Of a DNA stretch of 64,000 bases, positions 6 through 61,801 are shown in pieces (the stretch's first letter is position 1; each line of letters opens with the position of its first letter). Both the position numbers and the translations under genes were made by a program. A model generated the notes under the pieces. That model had not been told where the DNA came from. It worked only from the letters and a program-made list of their open reading frames with translations, and did no database searches. The stretch covers positions 124,001 to 188,000 of IMG/VR virus record IMGVR_UViG_3300042541_001760; one strand, given 5' to 3'.

Positions 6-473
6 ATGAATATTTTCGTTTTAGATTGGGATATTAAACAGTGCGCAAAAGACCATTGTGATAAACATTGCGTTAAAATGATTCTTGAGACCGCTCAATT
101 ATTGTGTGGTGTTCATTGGTTGTTGGGTAATGACGCTCCATATAAATTGAGTCATAGGAATCACCCGTGTTCTATATGGACAAGAAAATCATTAAGTAAC
201 TATCTTTGGTTATGTGAATTAGGTTTAGAGTTATGTAACGAGTATACTCGTAGGTATGGTAAAACTCATAAGACTAAACAAATACTTGAATGGTGTTTAG
301 ATAATAAACCTCAAATCCCTGATATAGGTTTTACAGAACCATCATTAGCAATGCCTGACGATTATAAAACTAATGATGTTGTTGAATCTTATAGGAGATA
401 CTACGTTAATGATAAGAAAGAAATTGCTAAGTGGAAAGATGGATATGTTCCAAGTTGGTTTAAATTATCCTAA
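6..473 (+). CDS. Pyrimidine-dimer DNA glycosylase / T4 endonuclease V-like protein
   Basis: MNIFVLD...HCDKHCVKMILETAQLL...HRNHPC...W and YRRYY...K...W motifs typical of the phage Pyr_excise/DenV-like family. Confidence 0.75.
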   Translation: MNIFVLDWDIKQCAKDHCDKHCVKMILETAQLLCGVHWLLGNDAPYKLSHRNHPCSIWTRKSLSNYLWLCELGLELCNEYTRRYGKTHKTKQILEWCLDNKPQIPDIGFTEPSLAMPDDYKTNDVVESYRRYYVNDKKEIAKWKDGYVPSWFKLS

Positions 474-1357
474 GCAGTACAACCACCATCTCTACAGAAT
501 AAATTCTTTTCTTTTTCTCTTCTTGTTTTTAATCCTGAAAATCCGGCTTTATCTGAGTTGAATGTGAGTATCCTTTTTGATGCCTCAGCAAATTTACCCG
601 CTCTAACATAATCAATTAAATCGTTTTGGGCTGAATCTCCTCGTATTGATCCACATCCAGCATTAAACGTTAAAGAAGTTAAAGCATCAAACATGCTTTG
701 AGTTATCGTTCTATTAATGTTATTTCTTTTCCACTCACCGAATATTCTTTTAACGCAATCGGATGCGGTTTTAGTATCCTTTTGTAATAATTGCTCCGCC
801 TTTGATTGGTTTATTGTCATATTAGGTTTTACATTTTCACCTGTATGACCAAATCCTACGGTCCATTTATCACCTGGTACTCTATAAGATTTTAACATAG
901 GTTGACAATTAGAACCCGGTTTACCTTCTTCACATTTCAAAAACTTAATAAGTTCTTCGGAAGGTTGTAATGATAAAGGGTCTAGTAATGTTTTTTGTTG
1001 TGATGATGTCTTTTTTTGTGATGGTAATGTATTTTGTTTTTTACCATTTAAAATTAGATTTAAAAGTCCGTTGGTTTTAAAAATATTGTAAATTGTTTTT
1101 TTCTCCTCATCGGTAAACTCATAAGGTTCTAATATTATTTGTTGTAGATTTTGACTATGATTCTTAACTAATATATTATTAACAGAATTTAAAATATTCT
1201 GATTATTTATTAGTTTTAATGCGGAATACATTTTTTCTTCATCCGTACCAACACCACTAACAGACGACCATATAGTGTCGGCAATTTCTTGGGGGTTCGG
1301 GGATTTTAATTGCTCAATTAAAATTTTACACTGACTTTCATTAATTATTAACTTCAT
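470..1357 (-). CDS. Phage lysozyme (GH24) with N-terminal leader and annexin-like repeat
   Basis: C-terminal EEG...Y...WTVGFGH...FDALTSLTFNAG...GLKTRREKE is T4/P21-type muramidase; N-terminal MKLIINESQ leader and SGVGTDEEKMYSAL segment. Confidence 0.85.
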   Translation of the reverse strand: MKLIINESQCKILIEQLKSPNPQEIADTIWSSVSGVGTDEEKMYSALKLINNQNILNSVNNILVKNHSQNLQQIILEPYEFTDEEKKTIYNIFKTNGLLNLILNGKKQNTLPSQKKTSSQQKTLLDPLSLQPSEELIKFLKCEEGKPGSNCQPMLKSYRVPGDKWTVGFGHTGENVKPNMTINQSKAEQLLQKDTKTASDCVKRIFGEWKRNNINRTITQSMFDALTSLTFNAGCGSIRGDSAQNDLIDYVRAGKFAEASKRILTFNSDKAGFSGLKTRREKEKNLFCRDGGCTA

Positions 1358-1430
1358 ACATATAAATATACCGAAGTTGTATTGATATTAAGGATTTTTA
1401 TATTTATGATTTGAAAAAACAGAAACTATT

Positions 1431-1856
1431 ATGAAAAAAATTCAGAGCGGAGACACCGTAAAAGTAAATTACACAGGTAAATTTGAAGATGGATCAGTAT
1501 TTGACACATCTATGGTTGAAGGTAGAGAACCTTTGACAGTAACTTTGGGTCAAGGACAACTTATCCCAGGTTTTGAAAATGGTCTAATTGATATGACTAT
1601 TGGTGAAACAAAAACTATTGAGATTGAACCGAAAGACGCTTATGGTGAACCTGTTGAGGGTATGCTACAAGAGGTTGATAAATCTCAGCTTCCTGAAGAA
1701 CTTGAGGTTGGTGGTATGTTACAAGCACAAGGACCGGAAGGGGTATTTAATGTTGTTATCAAGGAAATTAAAGAAACTACCGTTATTTTGGATGCTAATC
1801 ACCCATTAGCAGGTAAAAAATTGGTATTTGATTTAGAAGTTGTTGAGGTAATGTAA
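1431..1856 (+). CDS. FKBP-type peptidyl-prolyl isomerase (SlyD/SlpA-like, no His tail)
   Basis: GDTVKVNYTGKFEDGSVFDTS...GQGQLIPGFE...DANHPLAGKKLVFDLEVVEV. Confidence 0.93.
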   Translation: MKKIQSGDTVKVNYTGKFEDGSVFDTSMVEGREPLTVTLGQGQLIPGFENGLIDMTIGETKTIEIEPKDAYGEPVEGMLQEVDKSQLPEELEVGGMLQAQGPEGVFNVVIKEIKETTVILDANHPLAGKKLVFDLEVVEVM

Positions 1857-1862
1857 TAAATT

Positions 1863-2524: not shown

Positions 2525-2565
2525 ATATATAAATATCTTACTATTTATATTAAACACACAAAATT

Positions 2566-3726
2566 ATGGTCAAATTTACGAAAGATGTTTTATTGGAGGC
2601 GTTAGGAGTCCCTGAAGGGATATTAAAGTCGGCGGAATCAATGTATAAGAAATTAATTAAATTTATTTCTGAGGAGGGTGATAATGATGTTGATGATGAA
2701 AATTATTATTTTAAGTTGGATGGACCTTTTAAAATTAATGAATATAAAATTAAATCAATAAATTTAAGATTAACATTTATAACAACAGATAATGTTGATA
2801 CCATAACTCTTGTTAGTATGGGATTTTCATCTAAGGTTAGATTTGATGATGTTAATTTAACACTTATTGACACTAACGATAAAAAGAATTTGGATATGTC
2901 TATTAATATAGCAATACCAGATACAATAACTTTCTCTGAATTATATCAATTTATTAAAGTTAAGGATAAAGACATAATATCGTCTTTTGCACACGAACTT
3001 AAACACTCTTACGATTCAGTTAAAAAACCTTTGGAGTCCATTGGAGACAGATCAAAATATGTCGCATACACTTCTTTTGGTATTGGATTAGAATCGATTG
3101 ATAAATTTATTTTTAACCTTTATTATACAACAGTAATAGAATCGTTAGTTAGACCTACGGAAGTTATGTCATTACTAAAACAAAATAAGGTTAAGAGGAA
3201 AAATTTCATAGATTTCCTTTTAAATAATGAGACATACACCACACTTAAAAAAATATATAACTTCTCATTAGAAAATTTAAGAATGGAGTTATCTAAAGAA
3301 ATACCAACCATTAATAAGATTTTAACTCAGTTAAATGAGCGTGGGAGATATAAAACTAACGAAGAAAAGATAGACAGGATATTATACCTAACATATATTA
3401 ATTTAGGTAATGATATGGGTAGAACATTCCAATCCGTCTTAACAACTCACCCATTTGAAGGTATTTTTGGTTTTATGGATAAAAGAAAGGATATGATGTT
3501 CAATGACTTCATTAAGGAAATATCAAAATTTAACGATAACCCTAATGATTTTTTTGAATATGAAGAAAAAAAGTTTAAATTTGTATCAAGTAAGATGATG
3601 AAAAAACTATCCAAACTTTACGCTATGTTACCTGAAGATAAGAAATCAATCAAAAATTGGGATTTACATCAAAAAATAACTAAGAGGGCTCCGCTTGAAT
3701 CAGTATCTATATTTAAAAAGGATTAA
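2566..3726 (+). CDS. Hypothetical protein with zincin-like HExxH motif
   Basis: SFAHELKH motif; TATTTATA at 2542-2549; leader ending LLE. Confidence 0.5.
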   Translation: MVKFTKDVLLEALGVPEGILKSAESMYKKLIKFISEEGDNDVDDENYYFKLDGPFKINEYKIKSINLRLTFITTDNVDTITLVSMGFSSKVRFDDVNLTLIDTNDKKNLDMSINIAIPDTITFSELYQFIKVKDKDIISSFAHELKHSYDSVKKPLESIGDRSKYVAYTSFGIGLESIDKFIFNLYYTTVIESLVRPTEVMSLLKQNKVKRKNFIDFLLNNETYTTLKKIYNFSLENLRMELSKEIPTINKILTQLNERGRYKTNEEKIDRILYLTYINLGNDMGRTFQSVLTTHPFEGIFGFMDKRKDMMFNDFIKEISKFNDNPNDFFEYEEKKFKFVSSKMMKKLSKLYAMLPEDKKSIKNWDLHQKITKRAPLESVSIFKKD

Positions 3727-6541: not shown

Positions 6542-7989
6542 ACCCCCCTAAGTATGTAAATTTTTTTCTAAGTTTCATCCCTGATATTTTAGAGAAATAT
6601 TTAGTTACGATCTTATTAATTTCGTCTTCATCAGTCGCTCTAAAAATACTTGATACTCTTTCTAATAATTGTAAAGATATAGACCATTTGTGTCCGGATT
6701 CACCATCCCCAATCTTTAAGTCAACAACAAATACTAATCTTTCCTTATCATCAAAATAAGCGACTCTTGTATTAAGTTGGTTTTTCTCCCCTTCTAATAC
6801 ACCTAAAATATTGTCAATGTATTTAGTTACTAAACTATATAATCTTTCTTCACTTATTACTATATTCATATGAATAAATAGTGTGAATATAATAAAAATT
6901 AACGCATCATTTCGTTAATAATATTCATAAGATAGGTTTGTTTTTCTGATAAAACTCTAATCCGTTTTAATTGGGTTTCATTTAAATCAAATGATTCTGA
7001 TTTAACTTGGGAAATTTGATTTCCTAAGTGGTGATATTCCGACATCAATTGGTCGTATTTTTTTGCTTTGTTCTCGTTGTCCATATTATGAAATATATGT
7101 GGTATGGTGTGTTAGTCAATAGATGTTAAACTGCAAAAAACGTAACATCAACATCATAACTTTTTTCAAACCATACAACTAAATCATTTTTATTAATAAA
7201 AGGAAATGCGGATTTTAACATTTGGTAAAAATCATTATGAATATGTAACTTTTCATCCTTAAAATCGTAATATAATACCAAGTCCTTATTAAGTGTTACC
7301 CAAATACTGGTTTCCTGATGGTCATGACCAAACTTTAAATTATTCATATAGTCATAGAAGATTTCCATCAACCGACCATTCTGAGATTCAGAAATTAGTA
7401 TCTTCATAATCGGCAATATTATCCGAATCTTCAGCCCATTGTGTAAAATAGTCCAATTCCATATTATAGGACATACCTATTGAATCCTTAACATATTGTT
7501 CAAACATATCTTCAATTCTATCTTCACTAACACCCAACTCCATTGCTTTTTCAATAATACTTTCAGGAACTTCCAGTGTAATATATTTTAATTCACCTTC
7601 TAATGGTTGTTCGCTAATAACTCTTTTAACTAAACGAGTTAAATCTTTTTCTGTTAATTTTATAATTTTTTTCATACGCTTGCTTTAGATATTTTAACAC
7701 CTACGGTCCTATATTCAGGAAAATTATCCTTAAACCAATTATAAATATCGTCTTGATCAATAAACACAAATATGGATGTTATTCTTTCATAGAATTTCAA
7801 CGATATGTAAAGATAATATTCACCTTCATAATCTTGTTTTAGTAAAAAAACAAAATCTTTACCGGACTCAAATGCTGGTATGCCGAGACCCAACCAATTA
7901 TCATTCACTTTTAAATTAAGTTTGGACATATAATCCTCAAAGTGTTTATATAACCTGTCTTTACGTTCTTGTGATATTATTATTTTCAT
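6531..7989 (-). CDS. Cluster of short leader-bearing hypothetical genes (6531-6869, 6899-7084, 7126-7407, 7388-7675, 7672-7989)
   Basis: Contiguous ORFs starting MNIVISEE, MKILISES, MKKIIKLTEKDL, MKIIISQE; 6899-7084 lacks a leader. Confidence 0.65.
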
Positions 7990-10038: not shown

Positions 10039-10833
10039 TTAAATATTTTTATCCTCTTTTAATATTCTGAATCTTAATAGTGGTTTTCCGTTAATTGTAA
10101 TATCACCCTTTTCATTTTTACCAATTGTCTTAACAATAACTTTTTTATTTTTAAACTTACCACCCATAACGACATCACCAACATTAATATCAAGTTTTAT
10201 CATTTCGGATAGGGGGTTATTTTGTGTTTTTAACTTATAGGCAACTATTTCATAAGCCTTTCTAAGGTCGTGACTCCAAGCGTTATCAAGCCATCCTTCA
10301 CTATATTCGTTTGAGTTGGATCTGATAAAATCCATCATTTCACCATCTGAAATTTTTTCAGGTATTTCTATCTCACCTGGACATATAGCACCTTTAAAAT
10401 CATAACTTTCACAATACGAAACTTCTATCTCAGGATGACCCATCTCCTCACCAAATTTAGTGGTATAGTTGTCGTCATACCACTCCGCAATAACATTTAA
10501 GACATAACTTTCTCTAATGGAAAATAACCTTTTAATGTCATCAATAATTTTTTTTGAAAAAACTATGTGTCCTTCATTAAAATTATGAAGTTCAGGACCG
10601 TCATCGTCTTCATCATTATTAAAATAATAAATCGATCTGGCAATTACAACACCGTTCTTACACCAGTGTTCATCAAGGTTACCATAAAATTCTTTAGGGT
10701 CACCGACAATCCTTTTAGCTCCGACCATTTGTTTATTTAGGTAAGATATAATAACCTTTTCCATATTAGCATTTGATCTAACATATTTTTTTTGACTTTC
10801 TTCTCGTAATACTTTTCTAATTAGGTCTTTCAT
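10039..10833 (-). CDS. Hypothetical leader-bearing two-module protein
   Basis: MKDLIRKVLREE leader; internal PLSE followed by a small beta-rich module (DINVGDVVMGGKFKNKK). Confidence 0.55.
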   Translation of the reverse strand: MKDLIRKVLREESQKKYVRSNANMEKVIISYLNKQMVGAKRIVGDPKEFYGNLDEHWCKNGVVIARSIYYFNNDEDDDGPELHNFNEGHIVFSKKIIDDIKRLFSIRESYVLNVIAEWYDDNYTTKFGEEMGHPEIEVSYCESYDFKGAICPGEIEIPEKISDGEMMDFIRSNSNEYSEGWLDNAWSHDLRKAYEIVAYKLKTQNNPLSEMIKLDINVGDVVMGGKFKNKKVIVKTIGKNEKGDITINGKPLLRFRILKEDKNI

Positions 10834-10836
10834 ATT

Positions 10837-11163
10837 TTAAGGGCAGTTATCTGAATATTTATCTCTAATTAAAGTTCCGTATTTCTCTTCAAGATAAGTA
10901 TTAATAATATCATAATACGATTCAAGAATTTCTGTATTTAAATTTTCATCTTCACCAAAATGACTTAAATACTTATGATAAAACATTTCAAAAACATACT
11001 GAAACACAACCTCAAAGAACGTATTTTCATTATCATATTCATCACAATTATATTCTAACATTTTATTGCTATATATTGACTCAAATTTAGTGGTCATAAT
11101 TTCGTCAACATAAGACAATCTCCTTAACACAAAACTTTGATTCTCATTAATTATAATCTTCAT
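10837..11163 (-). CDS. Hypothetical protein (paralog of 12820-13113)
   Basis: Shared VLRRL...CDxYD...YLxxKxG pattern; MKIIINE leader. Confidence 0.55.
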   Translation of the reverse strand: MKIIINENQSFVLRRLSYVDEIMTTKFESIYSNKMLEYNCDEYDNENTFFEVVFQYVFEMFYHKYLSHFGEDENLNTEILESYYDIINTYLEEKYGTLIRDKYSDNCP

Positions 11164-11238: not shown

Positions 11239-12354
11239 TCATTTTTCATATAATGGTTTGTCGTTAAACGTGATAAATTTACCACCTCCTGATACAACAT
11301 AATCCTTATTATCAAATATATAGTATTTGTCACCCTTAGTGTTTATGAAAATGAATCTATCCACGGTAGTTCCGTATTTTTTCATACTATGAGTCGGGAT
11401 TAAATATTTACCATCTTCGGTCATTTTCATATCACCCGTCAAAGGTTTAACCTGATAATACATATTCTCCCCATTTATTCTCAAATCCCTCCCGTTTTTA
11501 GTATCCTCAATTGATCCGGGACAGTATTGGGTTATTCCACCCTCATCAACACTATGTAACGGCATTAGAATCCCCAACGCCATTTGTTCTCTGATATAAC
11601 CTGGTCTTAGTGTGCTTAAATTTAACTCTTCAAGTTTCGGTAAATGGTCTGATTTAGGTGCGAATAACTCACGTTTGTTATTTTCCAACCATTTAAAAAA
11701 ATCTTTGGATTTAAATTTATCTGGAGTAATATCACTTTCATTTAAAAATAGATTAACCAAGTATGTTATTACTTTACTATTTGTGTTGAAGTAATTAAGA
11801 ATAGACCAATCAGACACCAACTTATCATTAGGTCCGTATTTAACCCCCATAAAATTGATTACACCACTATTAGTCTTACAATTATCGTCCTTAACTGACT
11901 CCCCATACATCGGCTCGCCCACATCATTAGTTAAATCACCATATAATGATTTCATTATAGAATTCATTTTGGTCATAAAGAAACTTTTACTCTTAATATC
12001 ACTAACAATTGAACCTACGGTAATGTTTAAATCAAAGTCGGGGTTGTATTTTTTAAAATTATCTACAGTGATAAAAAACGCTTTATTATTTGTTGTTGAT
12101 TTTAAAACAGATTTTCCTTTCACATCCATAGAAGGAAATAGGAATGTTCCTCCTTCACCGACCAATTTAAATTCGGGGGTTGGCGCTTCATCATCCTTAT
12201 ACCACCCAAATATTGGATTATCATCTACTAATTCAATATTATTAAAATAAATTATATCCTCTCTTACATTAATGTCGGAAAATTTATAAGTGCCAGAATC
12301 AAAATCCATGGCCTGTTCCAATATTATATCCCTTACTAAATTAACTAATTTCAT
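11239..12354 (-). CDS. Hypothetical protein with possible PD-(D/E)xK nuclease C-terminal domain
   Basis: E...D.KNGRDL...YYQVK spacing is restriction-endonuclease-like; leader MKLVNLVRDIILEQ. Confidence 0.35.
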   Translation of the reverse strand: MKLVNLVRDIILEQAMDFDSGTYKFSDINVREDIIYFNNIELVDDNPIFGWYKDDEAPTPEFKLVGEGGTFLFPSMDVKGKSVLKSTTNNKAFFITVDNFKKYNPDFDLNITVGSIVSDIKSKSFFMTKMNSIMKSLYGDLTNDVGEPMYGESVKDDNCKTNSGVINFMGVKYGPNDKLVSDWSILNYFNTNSKVITYLVNLFLNESDITPDKFKSKDFFKWLENNKRELFAPKSDHLPKLEELNLSTLRPGYIREQMALGILMPLHSVDEGGITQYCPGSIEDTKNGRDLRINGENMYYQVKPLTGDMKMTEDGKYLIPTHSMKKYGTTVDRFIFINTKGDKYYIFDNKDYVVSGGGKFITFNDKPLYEK

Positions 12355-14649: not shown

Positions 14650-15018
14650 TTAAACGTAACTACTATCGTTTGACTTTGATTTATTTTGTGTAAACTCCTC
14701 ACAAAAAGATTGAAAGTATTTATCACCTTCAGGGGTAAATTTGTATCTATAAAAATCTCTAAAATCGTCTTTTACTTTATGTCCTGGACAACTGTACCAA
14801 AATTCATGAACTTCTTCCCCTCCACTAGCTTTAAAGTATATATCAATACCTTTAGGTTCGGTACTATATACCGTAATGTTACTGAACAAGGCTCCTGTCA
14901 CATCATTTAACAATTTTAATTTTTTTCCAGATCCACCTTCATTATTGGATTGTTCACTTAGAACTCTTTTTACTAATCTAACTAGATCGTTTTCTGTTAA
15001 TCTTACAATTTTTCTCAT
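14650..15018 (-). CDS. Leader-bearing hypothetical protein
   Basis: MRKIVRLTENDLVRLVKRVLSEQ. Confidence 0.65.
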   Translation of the reverse strand: MRKIVRLTENDLVRLVKRVLSEQSNNEGGSGKKLKLLNDVTGALFSNITVYSTEPKGIDIYFKASGGEEVHEFWYSCPGHKVKDDFRDFYRYKFTPEGDKYFQSFCEEFTQNKSKSNDSSYV

Positions 15019-15058: not shown

Positions 15059-16330
15059 TTATGCAGTTGGGTTGGTGGGTGATGTATTATTTTGTTTTAG
15101 TGCCAATTGATTAATATTTTGCCACATTTGATTTACATCAGTAAAACCTCTTTGGGCCCAACATAAAAATAACCAATAGATATCTACACTAGATTTCTCT
15201 CTAGTAATATATGGTTTTATCATATCTAAAGTTATGTTCTGACCTGGTTTTATCCCTAGAAGCCGTCTAATACCGGTAATATTTGACATTTTTTCAGTTT
15301 CTCTACAAATATATCCAGGGTCATGGGCGTAGTCCTTAATGATTTCATTTTTTCTTGCATCTATAATTGATATATATTTTGGATCCACATTTAATTTTTT
15401 CGCCGCCGCGGTAATTTCTGGTGAATACGTTGTGGTTTTATTGGAAGGGTTATAAAGGAAACTACTTTTGATTTGTTCTTTTGATTTTTTTTCGGAATCA
15501 TTTTTACCAAAAACAGAAGATATTTTCTCTTCAGGATTAAGTGGTTTTATGTCATAAATCATATGTTGAATTTCATGTATCAATATTTCATCAATTTCTT
15601 CTTCGTACGAAGACGAAAAAGAACAATTTACATATATGTTCCCATCAGGTCCATTAACAAATGCTATAGCATCATCGTGATCCGGATGAATACCATTAAT
15701 TTTTATTGTTCTATCATTATAAAAATTTAATTTTATTTTATTAAGTAATTCAAAGTATTTTGGATAGTATAAGGTGACCGCATACGGTTTATCGATATAA
15801 TTTGACAAAAACTTCTTTTTAGTTATTGGATCTGAGAGCCAATCTCTCCACCATTTTATAGCTCCAGGTAATGACTTACTCCAAAGTGATTTACATGATG
15901 CCATATCTGTAGTTGTAACGGAGTATCCATCACCCCCTGATAGTCGGAAACCCTCCATAAAGGTAGTCATACCACCATTATTTTTCCCAAAATTTGCCGT
16001 AGTGAAAACATTTATGTTATGAAGCGTAGCGATTAGAGACTCAACATCTTCCGCATTATCCCTTTCATATTCTTCGTTAATCATCTCAAAAAAATCGGAA
16101 TATCCCGTTTTTTTGTCTTTAAATAATGTTAATAAATATTTGAACTCATTTTGGTTCTTCAATTTTTTTATGGCTGAGAGTACTCCATCCGGATCGGTTC
16201 CCCAACCCTCAACCGCATCAATTATTTCGTTATAAATGGTAATTACAGAACTATTTGATTGGTCTTCCATAATAACCCTTTTAACAATACGAGTTAAATC
16301 AGATTCCGTTAATTTTATAACTTTTTTCAT
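15059..16330 (-). CDS. Putative metallopeptidase with annexin-like repeat and N-terminal leader
   Basis: MKKVIKLTESDL leader; AVEGWGTDPDGVLSAI; ILIHEIQH zincin motif with downstream E. Confidence 0.55.
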   Translation of the reverse strand: MKKVIKLTESDLTRIVKRVIMEDQSNSSVITIYNEIIDAVEGWGTDPDGVLSAIKKLKNQNEFKYLLTLFKDKKTGYSDFFEMINEEYERDNAEDVESLIATLHNINVFTTANFGKNNGGMTTFMEGFRLSGGDGYSVTTTDMASCKSLWSKSLPGAIKWWRDWLSDPITKKKFLSNYIDKPYAVTLYYPKYFELLNKIKLNFYNDRTIKINGIHPDHDDAIAFVNGPDGNIYVNCSFSSSYEEEIDEILIHEIQHMIYDIKPLNPEEKISSVFGKNDSEKKSKEQIKSSFLYNPSNKTTTYSPEITAAAKKLNVDPKYISIIDARKNEIIKDYAHDPGYICRETEKMSNITGIRRLLGIKPGQNITLDMIKPYITREKSSVDIYWLFLCWAQRGFTDVNQMWQNINQLALKQNNTSPTNPTA

Positions 16331-16361: not shown

Positions 16362-17981
16362 TTAAAAATATTGATTCATAAAAAATTCTTTCGCTAATTC
16401 TCTTGCCTTACGTTCAAAATACTTGTTCACTTCGGGGTTATTACCAAGATAACTAAATATTCCACCTTCAAGTTCAATTAGACTATTTCCCGATTCATAA
16501 GAAACATCTTTCTTATTAAGATTAAAAGTATAACAATGATATTGTTCATAATTCTTTCTACCTTTATAATGAGCGGTTATCAATACACAAATACTTTGAC
16601 CGTCTTTTGTGTAGTATATATTACTTGCTCTTTTAATTTCTAATCGTATACCCAACCGATCAATAAATTTTTCAATAGCTCTATCCATATAAATAAATAC
16701 TCAGGATTACTTATTAAGTTCTTCATCCAATATCCTTCTTGATTCATTCACCACCCACATATCCAATTCATTATGTGAATGAAAAAATCTTAACAAAGGC
16801 ATTTCATCTTCAGTTATAAACCATATATCGCTAAGTTTAATTTGGTCGTCTGAATAAACGTTAAAATCCGCCAATGAGGACGTTTCTTCAGGAGTTAGGT
16901 AATATATTGTCTTAGGTTCAAATGATATTAAAATACTATAAACTGTTTTATCCCACTTTTCAACTACCATTATGGAGTGTGAGATATTATAATGTTTGAA
17001 AATTAAGGTTAATAAAGATCCCATATAATTAAATATAATAAAACGGTTATCCCCACTTAACAATCTCCCAACGAATCTCAGGTCGGCTCTTTGTGCCCTT
17101 CTTAACTTGTTTAAGGTCAACTAACGCCTCGGCCCTTGTCTCATATGATTTTGGTGGAGTGTCCATCTCGTCATCCATCCTTCTTCTAAATTCAGAAGAT
17201 GTGGGTATCATACTATAACCATCATCACCTGTATATATAAACATACCATTTCCATTAAGATGTCTAGGGTGAGCAACAATATAATATCGTTCTTCCATTT
17301 CATTAATAACCCTTTCAACAATCCTTGTTAAATCGGATTCCGTTAATCTTATAACTTTTTTCATAATATATAAATACCCAAAATCATACTTTTTTATTTA
17401 ATAAACACAACACCAACATACTTCATGTTAATACCAAGATATTCAAACATTTTTTTAAATTCGGACCTGATTACAGAGATGTGAACACCATCAGAGGTTA
17501 TATTTTTTTCTTCCTTTACTTCAGGTCTATAATATAATGACTCCGGCATTGGTGGTTTAGAGTAAACCTCAATTACGTAATCATAAATTTGATTATTTCT
17601 ATCATACCTAATTTTTACCTCAAATTCAAATGGTTCGGTAATGAAGTTTTTGGTAAGATATCTATTGCCCAACTTATTATAAAGTTTTTCTACCGTTGCG
17701 GATAATTCATTCAGATTCATAACAGATAAATATATTGTAAAATAAAAAACCCCATACAAAGATGGGGAATTTAATTAACCATTCATTTCGGTTAAGAACT
17801 CACTAACGATTTGGTGACACTCATCATCGGTTAAATCTTGATCATAAAAATCAATCTCATCAGGGGTTACGTTCCATTCATCCCAATTGGCCATAATTGT
17901 AAACTCCTTACCTTGTTCGGTCTCACCTTTAAACCAAACCGTCTTTGATTGTAGTTTTCCGTTTTCGTAATCTATATTCAT
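16362..17981 (-). CDS. Run of short hypothetical genes (16362-16688, ~16707-17030, 17047-17364, 17394-17759, 17775-17981)
   Basis: ORF track; 17047-17364 carries the MKKVIRLTESDL leader. Confidence 0.55.
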
Positions 17982-18924: not shown

Positions 18925-19189
18925 AAAAATACATTAATATAATTTCCTACTCTAATCGGTTTTCGGATACCCCGTTCTTATAACACAACAAAGATATAAT
19001 AATAATCCCATAAAATCCAAAAATTTTTCAGAAATTTTATTTCGTATATTAGGTCTTAAATTAAAACGGGGGTCAATGTTATGGAACGAAGGTAATTGTC
19101 ACCCTCATTCAGAATACAAAGGCAAATATTACCCTTAATAAAAAACCCCTCTTTATGGGAGGGGATTAGTATTGATGTTATTAAAAACC

Positions 19190-19444
19190 TCAATTTGTAT
19201 CACTTTCATAAGAACTAAATATTCTATCACCGAAATATTTATTATACTCTTTTGGCCTGTAATGTCTTAAAAGATTTAAACCTTCTAAAACGGCCTCAAT
19301 ATTCAGATTATTTAAATCGTGTTTAAAGTCTTCGGCACCCCCAAAATACTCATTAATATTTGAGGAATCAAATTTATCTTCTTTAATGACCCTCTTTACC
19401 AATCTAACAAGATCGGACTCTGTTAATCTTATAACTTTTTTCAT
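19190..19444 (-). CDS. Leader-bearing small protein
   Basis: MKKVIRLTESDLVRLVKRVIKED. Confidence 0.6.
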   Translation of the reverse strand: MKKVIRLTESDLVRLVKRVIKEDKFDSSNINEYFGGAEDFKHDLNNLNIEAVLEGLNLLRHYRPKEYNKYFGDRIFSSYESDTN

Positions 19445-19567
19445 AATATATTTTTAATTATAAATACTCGGATTTTCTAAAAAATTTTCCAGAAAACTTT
19501 TTTTGACACCCTTATTTGTGAGAGGGGATTATCCCCCCTAAAACAGGTCAAAATGTCACTATACGGA

Positions 19568-26471: not shown

Positions 26472-26478
26472 ATTTTTT

Positions 26479-28468: not shown

Positions 28469-29002
28469 TTATTCTCCGATCCAAGCCTTTATTTTAACTT
28501 TTCTCCATTTCTTATAGTTATTCGTACCATCCGAACCTAAAGAAAGTATTGACATTGTTCTATGCCAACCCTCCATTAAATCATATCCCTTATTTGTTTT
28601 TATTAAGATGACAGGTTCGTTATTACCTTCACCATATTTATCCATAAGTTCTTTTTGTTTCTCATTTCTTTGGATATCGTTCGGAACTCCTTCCTCTTCC
28701 TTTTGTCCCATTTTTCTTCTAACCATATCTCTCTGTGATGACTTAGTGAAGTCGGATATGTTAACCGTAATAACTTTCTTGCTCCATTGTAGGTCTATGA
28801 AATCCTCAAATTGCTCGTAAATATCATCGTCATCCGCACCTTCATTAGATAACCTCTCAAACTCTGTCTTGAAGAATCCATCCTTTACATAAAATAACTC
28901 CTTGAAAACATATTCTGGTGTTGAGTCAAAGAAGGGTCTCATCTCGGAGTATGTACCCTTATCTCTTATCTCTTTTAATACTTTCTTTATTAAACCTCTC
29001 AT
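28469..29002 (-). CDS. ParB/Srx-like domain protein with leader
   Basis: EPVILI...YDLMEGWHRT motif; MRGLIKKVLKE leader; TATTTATT upstream. Confidence 0.6.
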   Translation of the reverse strand: MRGLIKKVLKEIRDKGTYSEMRPFFDSTPEYVFKELFYVKDGFFKTEFERLSNEGADDDDIYEQFEDFIDLQWSKKVITVNISDFTKSSQRDMVRRKMGQKEEEGVPNDIQRNEKQKELMDKYGEGNNEPVILIKTNKGYDLMEGWHRTMSILSLGSDGTNNYKKWRKVKIKAWIGE

Positions 29003-39224: not shown

Positions 39225-40280
39225 CTACTTCTTGATTTTTATATCCGTATGACTATCGTAATACTCGGTATCTCTATGAATTCTATCTACTTCGTAGTCA
39301 TATTTGTTAATACCATCCGCACTATCATCATCTAAATAATATTCAATAATATCTCTTTCACCTTCAGAGTATGTTTCAATTTCAATATAATAACTAGTAT
39401 CAACTATCTCATGATGAGTTTCGGTATATGTGACCATTGCCGTTTTCAATTCGGGGATAATAATATTATCAACACTTAAAGTTCCATTTTTTAAATGTTC
39501 TTTATTCTTCTTTATTAAGGCATAAACATAATCGGCATCGGCCGTATATTCAGTTTTAATACCTAACTTTTTACTTGCATTATTTAAATCACGATGAGTA
39601 AACCCATAATAATATTCCGCACTTAAAGTAGGATATACTTGTTTTAAAAAAAACACCAAAAAACGATTGTCAAATTCTGTAATTCTTACCATTTTATTTT
39701 AATTAAACTCACAAATACCAAAATACTCAATATTAATCTTTCCTAATATACCTGACAATACACTACTAAATAAAGAACCCTCCTCACCATATTTACCTCT
39801 TAAATGATTTTGTACCTCTAATACAATTTCAGTTGCTAGTGGGGTTTCGTCGGGGACTAAACTACCAATTAATTTTATTATCCCTTGAAACATCGGAGCG
39901 TTAAATGAGTTATAAAGGATTTTTATCGCCTCATTAACCGTACTAACCTTTAAATCTGTTTTAAGATTTACAAAAAAGTCATCTATTACTCCAAAAATTG
40001 GTGTTAGTTTTGATTTAAGATACGGATCTAACTTAGCTTTATTCTCGCCACAATATTGGGTTGTCCATTCCTTATAATCACTCATATGATTTGCGGGAAA
40101 AACGCTAACAAGTAGTTTAACTATGTTTTGTATTTGGTCTCTATATTTCCAAATTATCCCTATGCCGCCCTTTTCATCCGCTCCTTTAGTTGGGGTTTGT
40201 TTTGTTGTTCCTGAAGTTGTTTGTTCATACAGGCTCAATATTCTTTTTTTCTCTTCTTCGGTGATTACAAATTTTTTCAT
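39225..40280 (-). CDS. Two hypothetical proteins (39225-39692, 39699-40280)
   Basis: 39699-40280 has the MKKFVITEEEKKRIL leader and TATTTATA upstream. Confidence 0.6.
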
Positions 40281-49624: not shown

Positions 49625-49930
49625 TTATTGTCCAATTACCAAATCATCAAAATTTAATTTACCCATTCCTTTGTCACCCTCAACAAACTCATCATAAAAA
49701 TAGGCTTTAACAACGGAAGTAATACTTTGTTCGGCTTGAGCGATTTTACTTTCCATCCAATCGTCCATATCACCATTCTCTTCAAGGCTCTCCCACATTT
49801 TATAAGCCAATGTAGCGATGGTGAATAATTGTTGTTTCGCCATTTTATTTCCATCAGCATCTTCATTAATAGGTTTCAATTTATTAATGATTCTTTGTAG
49901 TTGATCCTCCGTTAATACGATATTTGCCAT
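49625..49930 (-). CDS. Leader-bearing hypothetical protein
   Basis: MANIVLTEDQL; KMAKQQL...DDWMESKIAQA. Confidence 0.6.
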   Translation of the reverse strand: MANIVLTEDQLQRIINKLKPINEDADGNKMAKQQLFTIATLAYKMWESLEENGDMDDWMESKIAQAEQSITSVVKAYFYDEFVEGDKGMGKLNFDDLVIGQ

Positions 49931-54420: not shown

Positions 54421-55815
54421 TTAATCTATCTTACTTTGTAACACTCTAACGAACTCAGCTTGTACCATTTTTACGAATTTAACATAAGGAGCGTCATCGT
54501 CATCCCCAAAAGATTTCCTACCTTTTGGTGGTCTTGTTGACCTTCCAAGATAATTTAATCCCGAAATGTTAGTTATACACTTATGACCACCTGAATTAGA
54601 TTCAATAATATCCCAAGCATTTACAGTAACATCATCCAACATCAACTTTTCCTCTTCGGTTAATTCATTAAAGTGTTTTGACATTGCCTTACCGATATCA
54701 GTTAGTACTTCCTTACCATTGTCCATAGTTTTGAACTTACTACCATATAAAGCCGCAAAGTCCTTGAATGTAAACCCTACCGAACCCTCTTTAACGGATG
54801 TCTCAGACACCCACTTAATAGTTGATAATGGTATTTGTCTTTCATTTAATTGTGACTCCCATTTTGATAATACCTCATCCTTAATCTCACCTAAATTAAT
54901 CCCCTTTAACTCTCTATCTTTCTTAAATGGATTACAAGATGCTTGAACTAATCCTAATGGCCAAGCAATAACCAAGAAGTCAGCCTCAGGATTGTTCTTG
55001 AATGGTGTATATCTATCATACGATCCAGGTTTCATCATGTTACCACCACCATACTGAGTAATTATATTACCACTGATTTTAACATTGGGGTTATTTTTCA
55101 TACTACCTACATAAACATCCTTGTTTTTCTGTAAGGTGGGTATGTCAGCATAACCTTTTTCAACCATTATCCTTTTTATGTTTTGTAGGATGTTCATAAT
55201 GGAGGGCGTGGATTTCATAACCAACTCTTCCAAGAATCCAGGTTTGTTTTTAAATGCTAACAATAATTTATTGGTAACCAATCCCAATAACATTTTGTTT
55301 TTCTGTAATGACTTGTCTTTATCTAAGGAGAATAAATAGTTAATAACTTCTTCGGGTGATATGTCGTTTGTTGCGTAATTTGCCGAATCTACCGTTGAGA
55401 TTAGGTTAATATCCTCAGATGTGAATATGTCTTTTGGTGACAATACTTGTGATATTGTTTCAACATTGGATCTTGATGATCTAAAACTCTTTGACTTTGT
55501 GTCCTCGGCTCCGGCTTGGGTATCGTGGTGGTCTGTATGTATAACAAACATTGGTTTTCCGTGGGCAAAGTCAACTAAAACCGGCATAACCTCGCCAGTC
55601 GCATCCGCCTTCTTTACCGAAAATTCTTTATCCCCATATTGGATTATCTCACAATCAACAACCTTAATACCATTATCTTCAAGATAATTTTTCATCGCCA
55701 ATGCGGTTGTGACCCCATCTAAATCTTGGTGAAAATATATTTTTGCTTTCTTGTATCTTTGGGATAACTTATTGATATCCCTTATCCCTGACTCTTTGAT
55801 TAACCTTTTTTTCAT
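54421..55815 (-). CDS. DHH-like phosphoesterase-fold protein with leader
   Basis: YFHQDLDGV, LVDFAH, HTDHH, GGH motifs; MKKRLIKE leader. Confidence 0.65.
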   Translation of the reverse strand: MKKRLIKESGIRDINKLSQRYKKAKIYFHQDLDGVTTALAMKNYLEDNGIKVVDCEIIQYGDKEFSVKKADATGEVMPVLVDFAHGKPMFVIHTDHHDTQAGAEDTKSKSFRSSRSNVETISQVLSPKDIFTSEDINLISTVDSANYATNDISPEEVINYLFSLDKDKSLQKNKMLLGLVTNKLLLAFKNKPGFLEELVMKSTPSIMNILQNIKRIMVEKGYADIPTLQKNKDVYVGSMKNNPNVKISGNIITQYGGGNMMKPGSYDRYTPFKNNPEADFLVIAWPLGLVQASCNPFKKDRELKGINLGEIKDEVLSKWESQLNERQIPLSTIKWVSETSVKEGSVGFTFKDFAALYGSKFKTMDNGKEVLTDIGKAMSKHFNELTEEEKLMLDDVTVNAWDIIESNSGGHKCITNISGLNYLGRSTRPPKGRKSFGDDDDAPYVKFVKMVQAEFVRVLQSKID

Positions 55816-59629: not shown

Positions 59630-60400
59630 TCATTCATATTTTTTAACGTTTGTTATACTTAAAGATTGATTACAATAATTCAAGATTCTTCTTTTGAAGA
59701 GTGGTAGTAGTGTTTCTTGTAGGGGATATTCCTCACTACCCATAACCTCAAATATTGAGTATTTGGTGGTTTCGTTTGGTTTTAACCATTTACTAAAATT
59801 AGTAATAATTTCCTGTAATGTCAAATCCTCTTTCTTTCCTGTGTAGATTAAGTTTGATGTGTTTTTGCTATCCTTATCATTTTTATTTTTCTTTATCCTA
59901 TACTCCCAAACATATAGAAGTTTCTCAGTTTTATTATAAAAATAAAAATATCCACATTTTTTATATAACTCACCCTTATTTTTCTTTAATGTTACGGACA
60001 CACTTTCATTGACCAATCCCCATATTGATTTGGCAATGTTAAAGTAATCATATATTTTTGGTGCTGAATATTTTAAAGTTCTTTGGTATTCATCTAACTC
60101 TACTTCCGTTAATGTTGGTATTGGTTTTGTTACCAAATCAGATATCAGTAACTCATCGTCACAATATTCAAACCTCTTCTCGGTGGTCATCATTCTACCC
60201 TCTTTAATTAGAGTTTGTATGTTGGCAAAATGTAATGATAACTCAATGAATGAGGGATATACCTCGTATTTATCAAACCTTTCGTTTAGTTTTTGAAAGT
60301 AACTCAATAAAATATACTCCTTATGCTCTGCATCTATCGGCTCTTGGAACAACCAATTGGTATCCAATAAAAATTCAAACCCTTTCTTTTTTCTTGTCAT
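59630..60400 (-). CDS. Conserved hypothetical protein
   Basis: W..EPID.EHKEYILL.Y; 256 aa. Confidence 0.6.
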   Translation of the reverse strand: MTRKKKGFEFLLDTNWLFQEPIDAEHKEYILLSYFQKLNERFDKYEVYPSFIELSLHFANIQTLIKEGRMMTTEKRFEYCDDELLISDLVTKPIPTLTEVELDEYQRTLKYSAPKIYDYFNIAKSIWGLVNESVSVTLKKNKGELYKKCGYFYFYNKTEKLLYVWEYRIKKNKNDKDSKNTSNLIYTGKKEDLTLQEIITNFSKWLKPNETTKYSIFEVMGSEEYPLQETLLPLFKRRILNYCNQSLSITNVKKYE

Positions 60401-60448
60401 TTCACTTCTTTTTTAAAATATAGTGAAAATAATTTAGGTTTAAAGTGA

Positions 60449-61801
60449 TTAATTATTTCTAATAATGATATATTGTTTTTCTAAAACATATTCAGAATCA
60501 TACGAACCATCATAACCATTCATAATTCCGTATCCATCAGAATCGACTAATCCTTGAGCCATAGCATCAACATCAACCCAATCTTTAACAGGCATCTCCC
60601 ACTCTTTTAACTTATCAAGAGGGTCATTCATTATATCACGCATTATTTCATCAACTTTTTCTTCAATCTGCGCTGGTGTTGGTTCTCTTACTCTATTTTG
60701 GATTTCCTCAATTTCTTCGTTCATTGCGTCAATCTGCTCTTCGTAATTATTCCATTCGTCAGAATTTATATCAGTTTCAGATTGTAGGTCTTCCATTTGA
60801 CTTATTTTATTTTCAAGTTCTTCAATATGTTCTTCTTCTTCATCGGTAGGTCCAAAATCGTTTTCATCAAAATATACATCTGTGTTGTTCATAACATCAT
60901 CCTCATAATGACTTCTAAAGAAGTATTCAATTCCACTCTCATCCAAATAATCTTCAACAAACCCCGTATTATAATTGTCAACACCAAGATCATCTATTGA
61001 GTCTTTTGCATATCGTAAAGCCTCGGCGTCCGCTTCTTCCTCACTACCCACACGATATTCTCTACCTGAAAGATCACCAGTGATAATATCAAAATTTAAC
61101 ATACTATTTCTATACCTACCCCCCGGTATTAATGAATATACATCCATTTTATTTTCTAAGGCTTCAATATCCTCCTCAATTGCGTCTATATTTCCTTGTA
61201 ATTCACCGGTATCGTTTCCTTGTTCTTGGTCATAAAGTAATCCACCTAACATTTCTTTAAGTTGTCTTAATTCAACTTCTTCTTCTTCCGTTATAAACAT
61301 ATCAGATTCTTCCGAAGATAGGTATTGAAATAAGGCTTGAGCTCTCAATCCATCGTAGTCCTCATTTTCAATTGCCCATTCATTTCTCTCCCTTCTTAGC
61401 TGAGCATCCGCCAACAATCCATTTATTCTAATACGTTCTCTCTTTCTCGCTATTGGTGTTCCTCCATCCCATATACTTCCCGTTACGGTAACTCCATCAA
61501 TAGATGATATTTCAGATCTGGATATATCCAACCTTCCATCAACATATTTTATTGGACCCATACTTTTAAACGAATCGTTATTTAAATTTAAACCCCCATT
61601 TATCTTAACCTTTTTACCTCTAAACATTTTTGTTTTAGCCAAAAAGTCCAAATTATTATTTGCTCTCTCAGCGTATTTTTTAAATTCATCTCCGGTCATC
61701 TCAATCCACTGCTCTTCATTTTGAACATCTTCTGTTTGTTCAATAACTAACTTAACTATATTCTCAAGGTCAGATTCCTTTAATTTAATAATTCTTGCCA
61801 T
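60449..61801 (-). CDS. Leader-bearing protein with LRR-like segment and acidic coiled coil
   Basis: MARIIKLKESDL leader; GGLNLNN...DGRLDISRS.ISSI. Confidence 0.55.
   Translation of the reverse strand: MARIIKLKESDLENIVKLVIEQTEDVQNEEQWIEMTGDEFKKYAERANNNLDFLAKTKMFRGKKVKINGGLNLNNDSFKSMGPIKYVDGRLDISRSEISSIDGVTVTGSIWDGGTPIARKRERIRINGLLADAQLRRERNEWAIENEDYDGLRAQALFQYLSSEESDMFITEEEEVELRQLKEMLGGLLYDQEQGNDTGELQGNIDAIEEDIEALENKMDVYSLIPGGRYRNSMLNFDIITGDLSGREYRVGSEEEADAEALRYAKDSIDDLGVDNYNTGFVEDYLDESGIEYFFRSHYEDDVMNNTDVYFDENDFGPTDEEEEHIEELENKISQMEDLQSETDINSDEWNNYEEQIDAMNEEIEEIQNRVREPTPAQIEEKVDEIMRDIMNDPLDKLKEWEMPVKDWVDVDAMAQGLVDSDGYGIMNGYDGSYDSEYVLEKQYIIIRNN

What the first reader, a model, noticed from the sequence alone, without database searches (positions are those of the whole stretch)
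470..61801. Shared N-terminal leader ending in [ILV]-x-E on ~20 unrelated proteins: candidate capsid-targeting/ejection system
Seen: otherwise unrelated proteins begin with a short basic amphipathic leader containing [ILV]-x-E. Examples are MKKVIRLTESDL..VKRVI (7388, 14650, 15059, 17047, 19190, 60449), MKxIINE/ISE (470, 6531, 7126, 10837), MxxLIxKVLxE-like (7986, 10039, 11239, 28469), MKKFVITE (39699), MANIVLTE (49625), PLITE (21916) and MKKRLIKE (54421). Most have TATTTAT upstream or are co-transcribed with such a gene, whereas genes behind host TAnnTTTG promoters lack the leader. Established: T4 internal proteins carry a 10 aa capsid-targeting sequence (MKTYQEFIAE) removed by prohead protease gp21 after (I/L)-x-E. 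Inference: a large, modular address tag loads diverse cargo (lysozyme, PG-binding, OmpA-like, metallopeptidases, ParB-like, DHH-like, ferritin-like, possible nuclease) into the head for ejection.
Basis: partly seen in the sequence, partly recalled or inferred. Interest (0 to 1): 0.88.

Follow-up and report, generated by a model that had tools for sequence, protein, structure and literature searches.

The report
Capsid-address leader on many phage proteins
About fifteen to twenty otherwise unrelated proteins of this uncultured 261-kb T4-like phage of Bacteroidota start with one family of 10-23-residue leaders ending in [VIL]-[LI]-x-Glu. The same genome encodes a T4 gp21-type head protease, so these leaders are most likely cleavable tags that load cargo into the phage head, and the tag marks more than 9,000 protein clusters in public metagenomes.

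Summary
Six window genes start with a near-identical 22-residue leader, MKKVIRLTESDLxR[IL]VKRVIxE.

Orthologues of one cargo protein (window 15059-16330) carry the long, medium and short leader types interchangeably. All types align to one invariant boundary, [VIL]-[LI]-x-E followed by Q, so the types are one family.

The leader is conserved as a peptide, because its codons vary synonymously. It marks 9,250 protein clusters. It was found in no cultured phage and in only 7 short MAG contigs among GTDB genomes.

Leader genes sit behind TATTTAT promoters (14 of 19, plus 4 co-transcribed). Outside the window, the same contig holds a T4-ordered head module behind the same motif. That module includes a Peptidase_S77 (T4 gp21-family) prohead protease.

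The capsid-protein propeptide and the scaffold carry the same xE motifs. In a relative, two leader genes lie between the protease and scaffold genes.

Best reading: T4-type capsid-targeting propeptides, on a much larger scale than in T4. Cleavage, packaging and ejection are inferred, not shown.

The parts
19190..19444 (-). Leader-A gene (84 aa). The leader is residues 1-22, window 19379-19444.
   Evidence: 52.8 bits to the leader profile. TATTTAT lies 15 nt upstream of the ATG.
17047..17364 (-). Leader-A gene (105 aa). The leader is 17299-17364.
   Evidence: 50.8 bits. TATTTAT lies 5 nt upstream.
15059..16330 (-). Leader-A gene (423 aa). The leader is 16265-16330. The cargo is one annexin-like repeat plus an HExxH zinc-peptidase-like domain.
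   Evidence: 48.2 bits. It has 317 homologues whose leaders are of different types. The AF2 model has pLDDT 81.6, with residues 1-30 at only 63-71. Weak fold matches to annexin repeats and to the minigluzincin selecase; no match reaches E <= 0.001.
14650..15018 (-). Leader-A gene (122 aa). The leader is 14953-15018.
   Evidence: 46.7 bits. TATTTAT lies 15 nt upstream.
7388..7675 (-). Leader-A gene (95 aa, acidic cargo). The leader is 7610-7675. It is co-transcribed from the TATTTAT promoter of 7986-8321.
   Evidence: 51.6 bits. Operon chain shown.
60449..61801 (-). Divergent leader-A gene (450 aa) with very acidic, coiled-coil-like cargo.
   Evidence: 34.5 bits. Weak phrog_530 'head maturation protease' hit on residues 306-387.
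49625..49930 (-). Leader-A-like gene (MANIVLTEDQLQRII...).
   Evidence: 9.3 bits to the narrow profile. 15.6 bits to the independent general profile. TATTTAT lies 16 nt upstream.
470..1357 (-). Medium (B-type) leader, MKLIINESQ..ILIEQ, on a protein with a C-terminal phage lysozyme domain.
   Evidence: PF00959 at 3e-25. 12.6 bits to the general profile. TATTTAT lies 4 nt upstream.
10837..11163 (-). B-type leader gene (MKIIINENQSFVLRRL).
   Evidence: 10.8 bits. Near-identical leaders of the form MKIIITENQ.[YD][IL][IL]RR occur in other contigs (L109, L123).
7126..7407 (-). B-type leader gene. It is a full-length paralogue of 7672-7989 and 6531-6869.
   Evidence: 11.6 bits. Paralogy shown.
28469..29002 (-). 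Helix-only (C-type) leader gene (MRGLIKKVLKE).
   Evidence: 9.2 bits. TATTTAT lies 6 nt upstream.
11239..12354 (-). C-type leader gene (..LVRDIILEQ).
   Evidence: 7.5 bits. TATTTAT lies 20 nt upstream.
10039..10833 (-). C-type leader gene (MKDLIRKVLREE), co-transcribed behind 10837-11163.
   Evidence: 6.8 bits. Operon chain shown.
54421..55815 (-). Short leader (MKKRLIKES) on a protein with a weak DHH hit.
   Evidence: 7.8 bits. The DHH hit scores 19 bits, below the Pfam cutoff of 28.
39699..40280 (-). E-type leader gene (MKKFVITEEEKKRILSLYEQ).
   Evidence: 47 confirmed IMG/VR loci start with this leader on diverse proteins behind TATTTAT. Only 3.8 bits to the general profile.
2566..3726 (+).
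   Evidence: 8.3 bits. TATTTAT lies 17 nt upstream. This is a weak call.
19460..19466 (-). Example of the TATTTAT promoter-like motif. 40 of 134 window ORFs have it within 45 nt upstream, usually 4-7 or about 15 nt before the ATG.
   Evidence: no -35-like block. The same motif precedes the portal, core-protein, protease and scaffold genes of this contig.

Best explanation
The leaders are most likely T4-type capsid-targeting propeptides. The proposed sequence of events is as follows.

1. A phage sigma factor, or another late-transcription device, turns on the TATTTAT promoters. These drive both the head-assembly genes and the leader genes.
2. The leader is a short extended segment (M-K-K-Phi-Phi-x-[IL]-T-E) followed by an amphipathic helix that ends in [VIL]-[LI]-x-E. 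It docks each cargo protein onto the scaffolding core while the prohead is built.
3. The gp21-family serine protease then cuts after the Glu of the terminal [LI]-x-E, and probably also after the [IL]-T-E near residue 9. This frees the cargo inside the head.
4. Some or all of the cargo then leaves with the DNA at infection.

Shown: the leader family and its peptide-level conservation; its interchangeability on one cargo; its link to the promoter motif; the presence and context of the protease and head module.

Inferred: docking, cleavage, packaging and ejection.
For: (1) Peptide-level selection. Invariant leader residues are encoded by many synonymous codons (Ser by TCN and AGT, Leu by TTR and CTN, Arg by AGR and CGN) in 113 genes.

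(2) Scale and position. 9,250 clusters at 50% identity match the profile at E <= 1e-3, almost always at residues 1 to about 25. More than 427 loci were confirmed in IMG/VR.

(3) Cargo is unrelated and mostly unknown. Only a handful of 216 leader proteins have any Pfam hit.

(4) Natural swap experiment. 112 orthologues of the 15059-16330 cargo carry A-type (15), B/E-type (50), C-type (12-16) or short (29) leaders. All align to one boundary: P1 is E in 52 of 56, P3 is L in 41 and I in 14, P1' is Q in 36 of 56. The boundary lies 9-10 residues before the conserved cargo start.

(5) The same contig has a T4-ordered head module: TerL, a gp20-like portal (PF07230, 3e-74), two small core-like proteins, Peptidase_S77 (83 bits against a cutoff of 27; phrog_207 at 1.5e-43; PDB 5JBL T4 gp21 at 2e-14), an acidic scaffold-like protein and a gp23-like MCP.

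(6) That module's own proteins carry the motif near their N-termini: ALLE-S, KVIKE-D and LINE-A in the capsid-protein propeptide, LVKE-S and IVSE-Q in the scaffold, and LLLE-S in the 242-aa protein. KVIKED is also how the leader of 19190 ends.

(7) T4 gp21 removes 10-20-residue CTS propeptides and cuts Alt at ITE-6 and LTE-619. Multiple sites per propeptide are usual (PMC5694885). T-even internal proteins share only the CTS (PMC3012670).

(8) TATTTAT precedes the portal, core-protein, protease and scaffold genes, and 14 of 19 leader genes.

(9) In IMGVR_UViG_3300008117_000212, two leader-A genes lie between the protease and scaffold genes. In total, 15 of 80 protease loci hold a leader-A gene within about 10 kb.
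Against: There is no direct evidence. No cultured relative exists, so there is no virion proteome, no mapped N-termini and no expression timing.

In 72 of 72 other protease loci, no leader gene lies between the protease and the scaffold, so the L069 arrangement is an exception.

The whole 22-residue A-type leader is far more conserved than a cleavage site needs, and what it binds is unknown.

Cargo is not basic as T4 internal proteins are: the mean is -2.8 charges per 100 aa, similar to the -2.1 of all called genes in the 138-kb region.

Some proteins carry a second, internal leader copy. This has no T4 CTS precedent, although internal gp21 sites do.

The similarity between the leader and the capsid-protein propeptide is only a 6-residue match with no statistical weight.

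The Phi-Phi-x-E[QESDN] statistic was defined after looking at the data.
Confidence: 0.62

Rival explanations
1. The leaders are propeptides cut by the head protease, but the proteins are structural or scaffolding parts of the prohead or virion, or zymogens held inactive until assembly. In this reading the cargo is not ejected into the host.
For: The same evidence for the protease and the motif applies. 60449-61801 is acidic, coiled-coil-like and scaffold-like. A conserved ~160-aa leader-A family sits near the head module in many relatives. The HExxH peptidase cargo could be a zymogen.
Against: The cargo is extremely diverse and turns over fast: 9,250 clusters, almost none annotated. That fits accessory proteins better than structural parts. 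This reading is not exclusive with the best explanation, because T4 has both kinds.
Confidence: 0.17
2. The leader is an uncleaved docking or sorting helix read by something other than the prohead. Candidates are the phage's own ClpA/B-like AAA+ protein or other chaperones, acting as a degron or timer, or another phage assembly or compartment.
For: The contig encodes a 680-aa ClpA/B-like AAA+ protein, DnaJ and HSP20. All 22 residues are conserved, which suggests a specific binding partner. Internal copies exist.
Against: The invariant feature across interchangeable leader types is the [LI]-x-E-Q boundary, not the helix body. The same motif occurs in the capsid-protein propeptide and the scaffold, and the promoter is shared with head genes. 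Leader genes lie inside a head module in a relative.
Confidence: 0.1
3. The leader is an export or processing leader of the bacteriocin (double-glycine) kind, or another secretion signal.
For: From my own recollection, not a tool result: it superficially resembles amphipathic M-K-K..L-T-E..[ML]..I-I bacteriocin leaders.
Against: There is no Gly-Gly; the final positions are x-E. No C39 peptidase or ABC exporter appears in the Pfam tables of the roughly 164 kb that carry them. The leader has no hydrophobic core, whereas ordinary signal and lipoprotein peptides do occur on other proteins of this window, such as 17993-18388, 34542-34925 and 48112-49125.
Confidence: 0.03
4. The conserved 5' end is a nucleic-acid feature, either a promoter plus translation-initiation cassette or a recombination hot spot. 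In that case the peptide has no function of its own.
For: The promoter and the short 5' UTR are also similar among some copies. AAA-rich codons after the ATG may help initiation in Bacteroidota, which is my own knowledge rather than a tool result.
Against: Synonymous codons vary freely while the amino acids stay fixed. Internal copies without a promoter or a Met keep the peptide. Leader types that differ in length keep the same E-Q boundary.
Confidence: 0.03

Closest known systems
Capsid-targeting sequences (CTS) of phage T4 internal proteins IPI-III and Alt, removed by prohead protease gp21
   Same: A short N-terminal tag (10-20 aa in T4, 10-23 aa here) on otherwise unrelated, fast-evolving proteins. 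The tag ends in [IL]-x-Glu, and T4 Alt is cut at ITE-6 and LTE-619 (PMC5694885). The genome has a Peptidase_S77 protease in a gp20 / core proteins / gp21 / scaffold / gp23 gene order. The promoter is a single AT-rich block with no -35 element.
   Different: There is no evident sequence similarity to the T4 CTS beyond the terminal motif. The A-type tag is longer and has two parts (strand plus helix, with two candidate sites). Numbers are far larger: at least 8 strong and about 12 weaker leader genes in the parts of the contig scanned (138-174 kb), and more than 9,000 clusters overall. Internal second copies exist. The host phylum is Bacteroidota. Nothing has been tested biochemically.
Long propeptides of head and ejection proteins in phiKZ and SPN3US giant phages, cut by S80 proteases
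   Same: Jumbo phages load many proteins into the head through N-terminal propeptides that are cut after Glu. Paralogues can share identical N-termini (PMC5694885).
   Different: Those propeptides are mostly longer than 100 residues, and the motif is (S/A/G)-x-E. Here P3 is L or I, and the protease scores as S77 (83 bits) rather than S80 (17 bits, below the cutoff).
'Moraphages', aquatic jumbo phages of Bacteroidota (PMC12619734)
   Same: Aquatic phages of 200-300 kb with predicted Bacteroidota hosts. They have T4-like gp19, gp25, gp6 and gp13, portal and 'prohead core protein protease' VOGs, plus a sigma factor, ClpA-like protein, glutaredoxin and DnaJ. This contig has a sigma factor, ClpA/B-like protein, glutaredoxin, DnaJ, portal and S77 protease.
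   Different: Membership of this contig was not tested, because no shared marker tree was built. In a term search of the main text, that paper contains no occurrence of 'N-terminal' and no description of a leader.
MuF-domain polymorphic toxins and other head-packaged phage proteins such as P1 Dar and P22 ejection proteins
   Same: The idea of a constant N-terminal part that brings variable cargo into the capsid.
   Different: These use whole domains or specific assembly partners, not a 10-23-residue cleavable tag. No MuF domain was seen here.

Membership tests
T4-type capsid-targeting propeptide (CTS) system | A short tag (about 10-20 aa) at the extreme N-terminus | tested here: met
   The leader starts at Met1 in about 150 ORFs of 80 loci and in nearly all of the top 150 clusters. 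Its length is 10-23 aa across the types.
T4-type capsid-targeting propeptide (CTS) system | The tag ends in the gp21 cleavage motif (L/I)-x-Glu | tested here: met
   In the A-type leader, position 20 is I/V/L and position 22 is E in 115 of 117. Across leader types, P3 is L or I in 55 of 56 and P1 is E in 52 of 56.
T4-type capsid-targeting propeptide (CTS) system | The same phage encodes a gp21-family (Peptidase_S77) prohead protease | tested here: met
   L155:17076-17807 matches PF03420 at 2.3e-23 (83 bits, cutoff 27), phrog_207 at 1.5e-43 and PDB 5JBL at 1.9e-14.
T4-type capsid-targeting propeptide (CTS) system | A T4-like prohead core: portal, core proteins, scaffold and a gp23-like capsid protein with a cleavable propeptide | tested here: met
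   The capsid-protein propeptide, with its xE motifs, is conserved in relatives. The scaffold and core proteins are assigned by position and composition only.
T4-type capsid-targeting propeptide (CTS) system | The tag is shared by otherwise unrelated, variable cargo and is transferable between cargoes | tested here: met
   Window proteins share only the leader. Cargo is mostly unannotated. Leader types swap on orthologous cargo.
T4-type capsid-targeting propeptide (CTS) system | Late expression together with head genes | tested here: inconclusive
   The TATTTAT motif is shared with the portal, protease and scaffold genes. There are no transcript data.
T4-type capsid-targeting propeptide (CTS) system | The tag is cleaved in the prohead, and the cargo is found in virions and ejected | not testable with these tools
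   There is no cultured relative. Proteomics or biochemistry is needed.
T4-type capsid-targeting propeptide (CTS) system | Sequence homology of the tag to the T4 CTS | not tested
   No alignment to T4 sequences was made. Only the published cut motifs (ITE-6, LTE-619; PMC5694885) were compared with the [IL]-T-E core.
phiKZ/SPN3US-type propeptides (S80 protease) | An S80-family protease and an (S/A/G)-x-E motif | tested here: not met
   S80 scores 16.8 bits, below its cutoff of 23.4, whereas S77 scores 83 bits. P3 is L or I.
Double-glycine (bacteriocin-type) export leaders | Gly-Gly at the cleavage site, and a C39-peptidase ABC exporter nearby | tested here: not met
   There is no GG. No such exporter appears in the Pfam tables of about 164 kb of the contig.
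Sec or lipoprotein signal peptides | A hydrophobic core of 10 or more residues after a basic N-region | tested here: not met
   The leader is charged throughout and is predicted to be an amphipathic helix over residues 9-29. True signal peptides occur on other window proteins.

The most novel reading that the evidence does not exclude
The leader may not be, or not only be, a capsid tag. It could be a general phage-encoded sorting code. Its graded forms (short, medium and long leaders, and internal copies in two-cargo polyproteins) would be read by a conserved partner such as the phage's ClpA/B-like unfoldase or an unknown assembly. That partner would set the place, amount or lifetime of dozens of phage proteins. 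This would be a new kind of viral protein-addressing system.
Probability: 0.1. Interest if true: 0.85.

Novelty: new member of a known kind. Interest (0 to 1): 0.62.

Why it matters
If the leader works as in T4, it is a sequence-readable label for proteins that a large, abundant and uncultured clade of aquatic Bacteroidota phages packs into its heads and probably injects. More than 9,000 mostly unannotated protein clusters carry it.

In T-even phages such internal proteins counter host defences. The tag would therefore point straight to a large pool of candidate early-acting effectors, including anti-defence proteins and cell-wall enzymes.

It also shows that the T4 CTS principle is old and widespread. 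It offers a natural series of tag lengths for studying how proheads select cargo, and a possible tool for loading foreign proteins into phage heads.

Tried and rejected
- A narrow leader-A HMM and a consensus score made the looser groups look like chance. I dropped that conclusion after the orthologue comparison.
- A search with 14650-15018, residues 1-40, in the word-indexed protein collection found only its own cluster and one near-identical cluster, because that leader is atypical.
- tblastn of a leader protein and of two large proteins against cultured phages gave nothing useful. There was one weak hit to Salicola phage SCTP-2.
- megablast of two 6-kb pieces found no match.
- The GTDB genome scan gave 7 hits, all on short MAG contigs. 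So the leader is not a prophage or cellular feature.
- The N-terminal type KK.L.E..N.I...MG (4433-6013 and L101:2020-4206) had 242 pattern matches, but only the query itself was confirmed. It is left open.
- Walking the contig used all 12 look-ups through 70-224 kb without finding a head gene. One of them returned a related 148-kb contig instead.
- The head module was reached only by a further IMG/VR scan.
- DNA-search loci have flanks of only 1.5 kb and are useless for walking.
- PHROG and Pfam scans of ten large proteins in 77-215 kb found nothing structural.
- The leader HMM does not significantly match the capsid-protein propeptide.
- The linker after the leader is only mildly enriched in Q, P, E and D, and cargo charge is ordinary.

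Full report
**Source and layout.** The window is bases 124,001-188,000 of IMGVR_UViG_3300042541_001760, a 261,052-bp metagenomic viral contig. It has about 31% G+C, and nearly all genes are on the minus strand. The coordinates in the finding are the stop ends of minus-strand ORFs, and the quoted N-termini are all present.

**The strong leader.** Six ORFs begin with MKKVIRLTESDLxR[IL]VKRVIxE: 7388-7675, 14650-15018, 15059-16330, 17047-17364, 19190-19444 and 60449-61801.
- A profile of this leader scores these six at 34-53 bits in a six-frame scan. The next hit scores 9 bits.
- BLASTP shows that the six share only their first 22-40 residues.
In the 80 loci kept, about 150 ORFs of 80-360 aa start with the leader.
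- A profile search of 1.84 billion cluster representatives found 9,250 proteins at E <= 1e-3 and 1,249 at E <= 1e-10. The match is almost always at residues 1 to about 25.
- Some proteins carry a second, internal copy with no Met in front of it.
- Nothing was found in cultured phages. Species-representative genomes gave only 7 hits, all on short MAG contigs. No paper in the library contains the core hexapeptide.
- Pfam and PHROGs do not model the leader, and almost none of 216 leader proteins has any domain hit. The exceptions are thioredoxin, PG_binding_1, YkuD/Tlde1, LysM, annexin, GNAT and ParB-C.

**Peptide, not nucleic acid.** Across 113 leader genes the invariant residues are encoded by many synonymous codons. 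Ser10 uses TCN and AGT, Leu7 and Leu12 use TTR and CTN, and Arg14 and Arg18 use AGR and CGN. AlphaFold on the leader alignment gives an unstructured segment at residues 1-8 and a helix at residues 9-29, with mean pLDDT 86.

**One family, several lengths.** Three of them (6531, 7126, 7672) are simply paralogues. The cargo of 15059-16330 settled the question.
- It has 317 homologues over its full length.
- Among 112 homologues with a recognisable cargo start, 15 carry the long A-type leader. Twenty-nine carry a short ..LL...LQEQ or MIRLKHILEQ.
- In the alignment these types are insertion-deletion variants of one another, with one fixed boundary. P4 is V, I or L. P3 is L in 41 and I in 14. P1 is E in 52 of 56. 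P1' is Q in 36 of 56. The boundary lies 9-10 residues before the conserved start of the cargo.
- A profile built only from those foreign leaders scores 19 of 223 N-termini in 138 kb of this contig at 6 bits or more, against 1 of 787 internal segments.
- The MKKF[IV]ITEEEK.RIL type (39699-40280) is separately confirmed on diverse proteins in 47 IMG/VR loci. B-type leaders recur in the flanks of those loci.

**Promoter.**
- TATTTAT lies within 45 nt upstream of 40 of 134 window ORFs, mostly 4-7 or about 15 nt before the ATG.
- It lies within 60 nt upstream of 85 of 113 leader genes elsewhere.
- There is no -35-like block.
- Fourteen of 19 leader genes have the motif directly, against 51 of 204 other genes (p = 3e-5). 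Four more are co-transcribed behind such a gene. Genes with only the host-type TAnnTTTG motif essentially lack leaders.
- The contig encodes its own sigma-70-family factor. That gene follows a gene with a host-type promoter motif.

**Head module and protease.** Walking the contig from 70 to 224 kb found auxiliary, cell-wall, chaperone and replication genes but no head genes. The next step left, L155 (contig 50,370-71,158), holds a module in T4 gene order:
- a T4-type large terminase;
- a gp20-like portal (PF07230, 3e-74);
- proteins of 242 aa and 150 aa;
- a Peptidase_S77 prohead core protease (83 bits against a cutoff of 27; phrog_207 at 1.5e-43; PDB 5JBL T4 gp21 at 2e-14);
- a very acidic 493-aa scaffold-like protein;
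- a gp23-like major capsid protein.

TATTTAT precedes the portal, the 242-aa protein, the protease and the scaffold. The capsid-protein propeptide is almost identical in relatives and contains ALLE-S, KVIKE-D and LINE-A. The scaffold has LVKE-S and IVSE-Q, and the 242-aa protein has LLLE-S.

Published work on T4 is consistent with this picture. gp21 removes 10-20-residue CTS propeptides from the internal proteins and Alt. It cuts Alt at ITE-6 and LTE-619, and it often cuts propeptides at several sites (PMC5694885; also PMC9958956). T-even internal proteins are diverse defence proteins that share only the CTS (PMC3012670).

**Context in relatives.**
- In IMGVR_UViG_3300008117_000212 the order is: core protein, S77 protease, small ORF, a protein with an M-N-K-S-F-S-K-I-R-H N-terminus, a leader-A protein of 346 aa, a leader-A protein of 125 aa, scaffold, capsid protein.
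- More than 573 IMG/VR contigs encode a related protease, and the 80 best-matching loci kept are 78-99% identical to it. Fifteen of those 80 loci contain a leader-A gene. It is usually a conserved ~160-aa family 8-9 kb away on the other strand.
- None of 72 further loci has a leader gene between the protease and the scaffold.
- In the 174 kb of this contig that I could read, eight genes carry the strong leader.

**Interpretation.** The leader family has the position, length, terminal motif, cargo diversity, promoter class and protease partner of T4 capsid-targeting propeptides. I therefore read it as a large new member of that kind, in a T4-like jumbo phage of Bacteroidota.

The Bacteroidota host is suggested by TAnnTTTG promoter motifs and by CHU_C, SprB and PKD proteins. 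The phage resembles the 'moraphages' of PMC12619734.

Docking to the core, cleavage after Glu, packaging and ejection are all inferences. The rival readings are listed separately. The peptide-level conservation and the invariant E-Q boundary argue against a purely nucleic-acid or export-signal explanation.

**Cargo.**
- Confirmed: lysozyme (470-1357) and a PG-binding domain (21916-22926).
- The 15059-16330 cargo models well (pLDDT 81.6, with the leader at lower confidence). It weakly resembles one annexin repeat plus a minigluzincin-type HExxH peptidase, and no fold match reaches E <= 0.001.

Noticed in passing
window 32415-34486 and 52930-53624; L088:12208-13272 and 16619-16930: There are twelve paralogues of 100-120 aa that begin M[DN][IV][QE]VN..Q..RV.IKWL, 40-54% identical over their full length. 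Six of them are in tandem. Their N-terminus weakly resembles the leader pattern.
   Followed up: partly
window 25410-26510: There are four small (67-84 aa) paralogous ORFs that share a ..TAVEWL..[EQ]L motif near the N-terminus. They lie in a block of tiny genes with no TATTTAT motif.
   Followed up: no
window 52298-52732: The phage encodes an SmpB homologue (PF01668) behind a host-type TAnnTTTG motif. The contig also carries at least 7 tRNA genes at L101:10705-19665. No tmRNA was seen in the parts scanned.
   Followed up: partly
window 19982-20050 (+) and 18944-18976 (-): Rfam finds a tRNA-like element that ARAGORN missed, and a DUF805b RNA motif just upstream of 18391-18924. The stretch from 19.4 to 24.7 kb has few convincing ORFs.
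   Followed up: no
L102:4887-5687 (contig about 209.7-210.5 kb): This is a phage sigma-70-family factor with regions 2 and 4. It follows a gene that has a host-type promoter motif. It is a candidate reader of the TATTTAT promoters.
   Followed up: partly
window 13479-14636; L069:1482-1931: There is another shared N-terminus, M[RN]KS[YF]SKIRH[MI]QESN. The window protein repeats I[IL]LEN..[LM].KSKINE near both ends. Its homologues P0005 and P0033 carry leader A instead.
   Followed up: partly
window 4433-6013; L101:2020-4206: A further N-terminal type, KK.L.E..N.I...MG, is followed by L[IL].E. It had 242 pattern matches in IMG/VR, but only the query was confirmed by tblastn.
   Followed up: partly
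P0003, P0005, P0007, P0020, P0057 (public proteins): These proteins carry two leader copies, the second internal and without a Met. Each copy precedes a separate cargo segment, so they may be polyproteins meant to be cut.
   Followed up: partly
L088:13269-15811; L098:1219-3795: These phage proteins have signal peptides plus PKD, SprB and CHU_C (type IX secretion C-terminal) domains. They could be surface or secreted proteins made in a Bacteroidota host.
   Followed up: no
window 470-1357 (residues 11-92) and 15059-16330 (residues 18-106): The two proteins share an annexin-like G.GT[DN] repeat region just after their different leaders (26% identity, E 0.003).
   Followed up: partly
L154:12714-14756, L154:14910-15281, L099:4090-5034: The contig carries a ClpA/B-like AAA+ protein, HSP20 and DnaJ. 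A leader-A gene (L154:15328-15717) lies next to HSP20.
   Followed up: no
upstream of L020:525, L025:1091, L155:8177 and several loci: The gene that precedes several leader genes ends in a conserved ..[LI]GG..NGL[NY].. C-terminus. The identity of that gene family was not determined.
   Followed up: no
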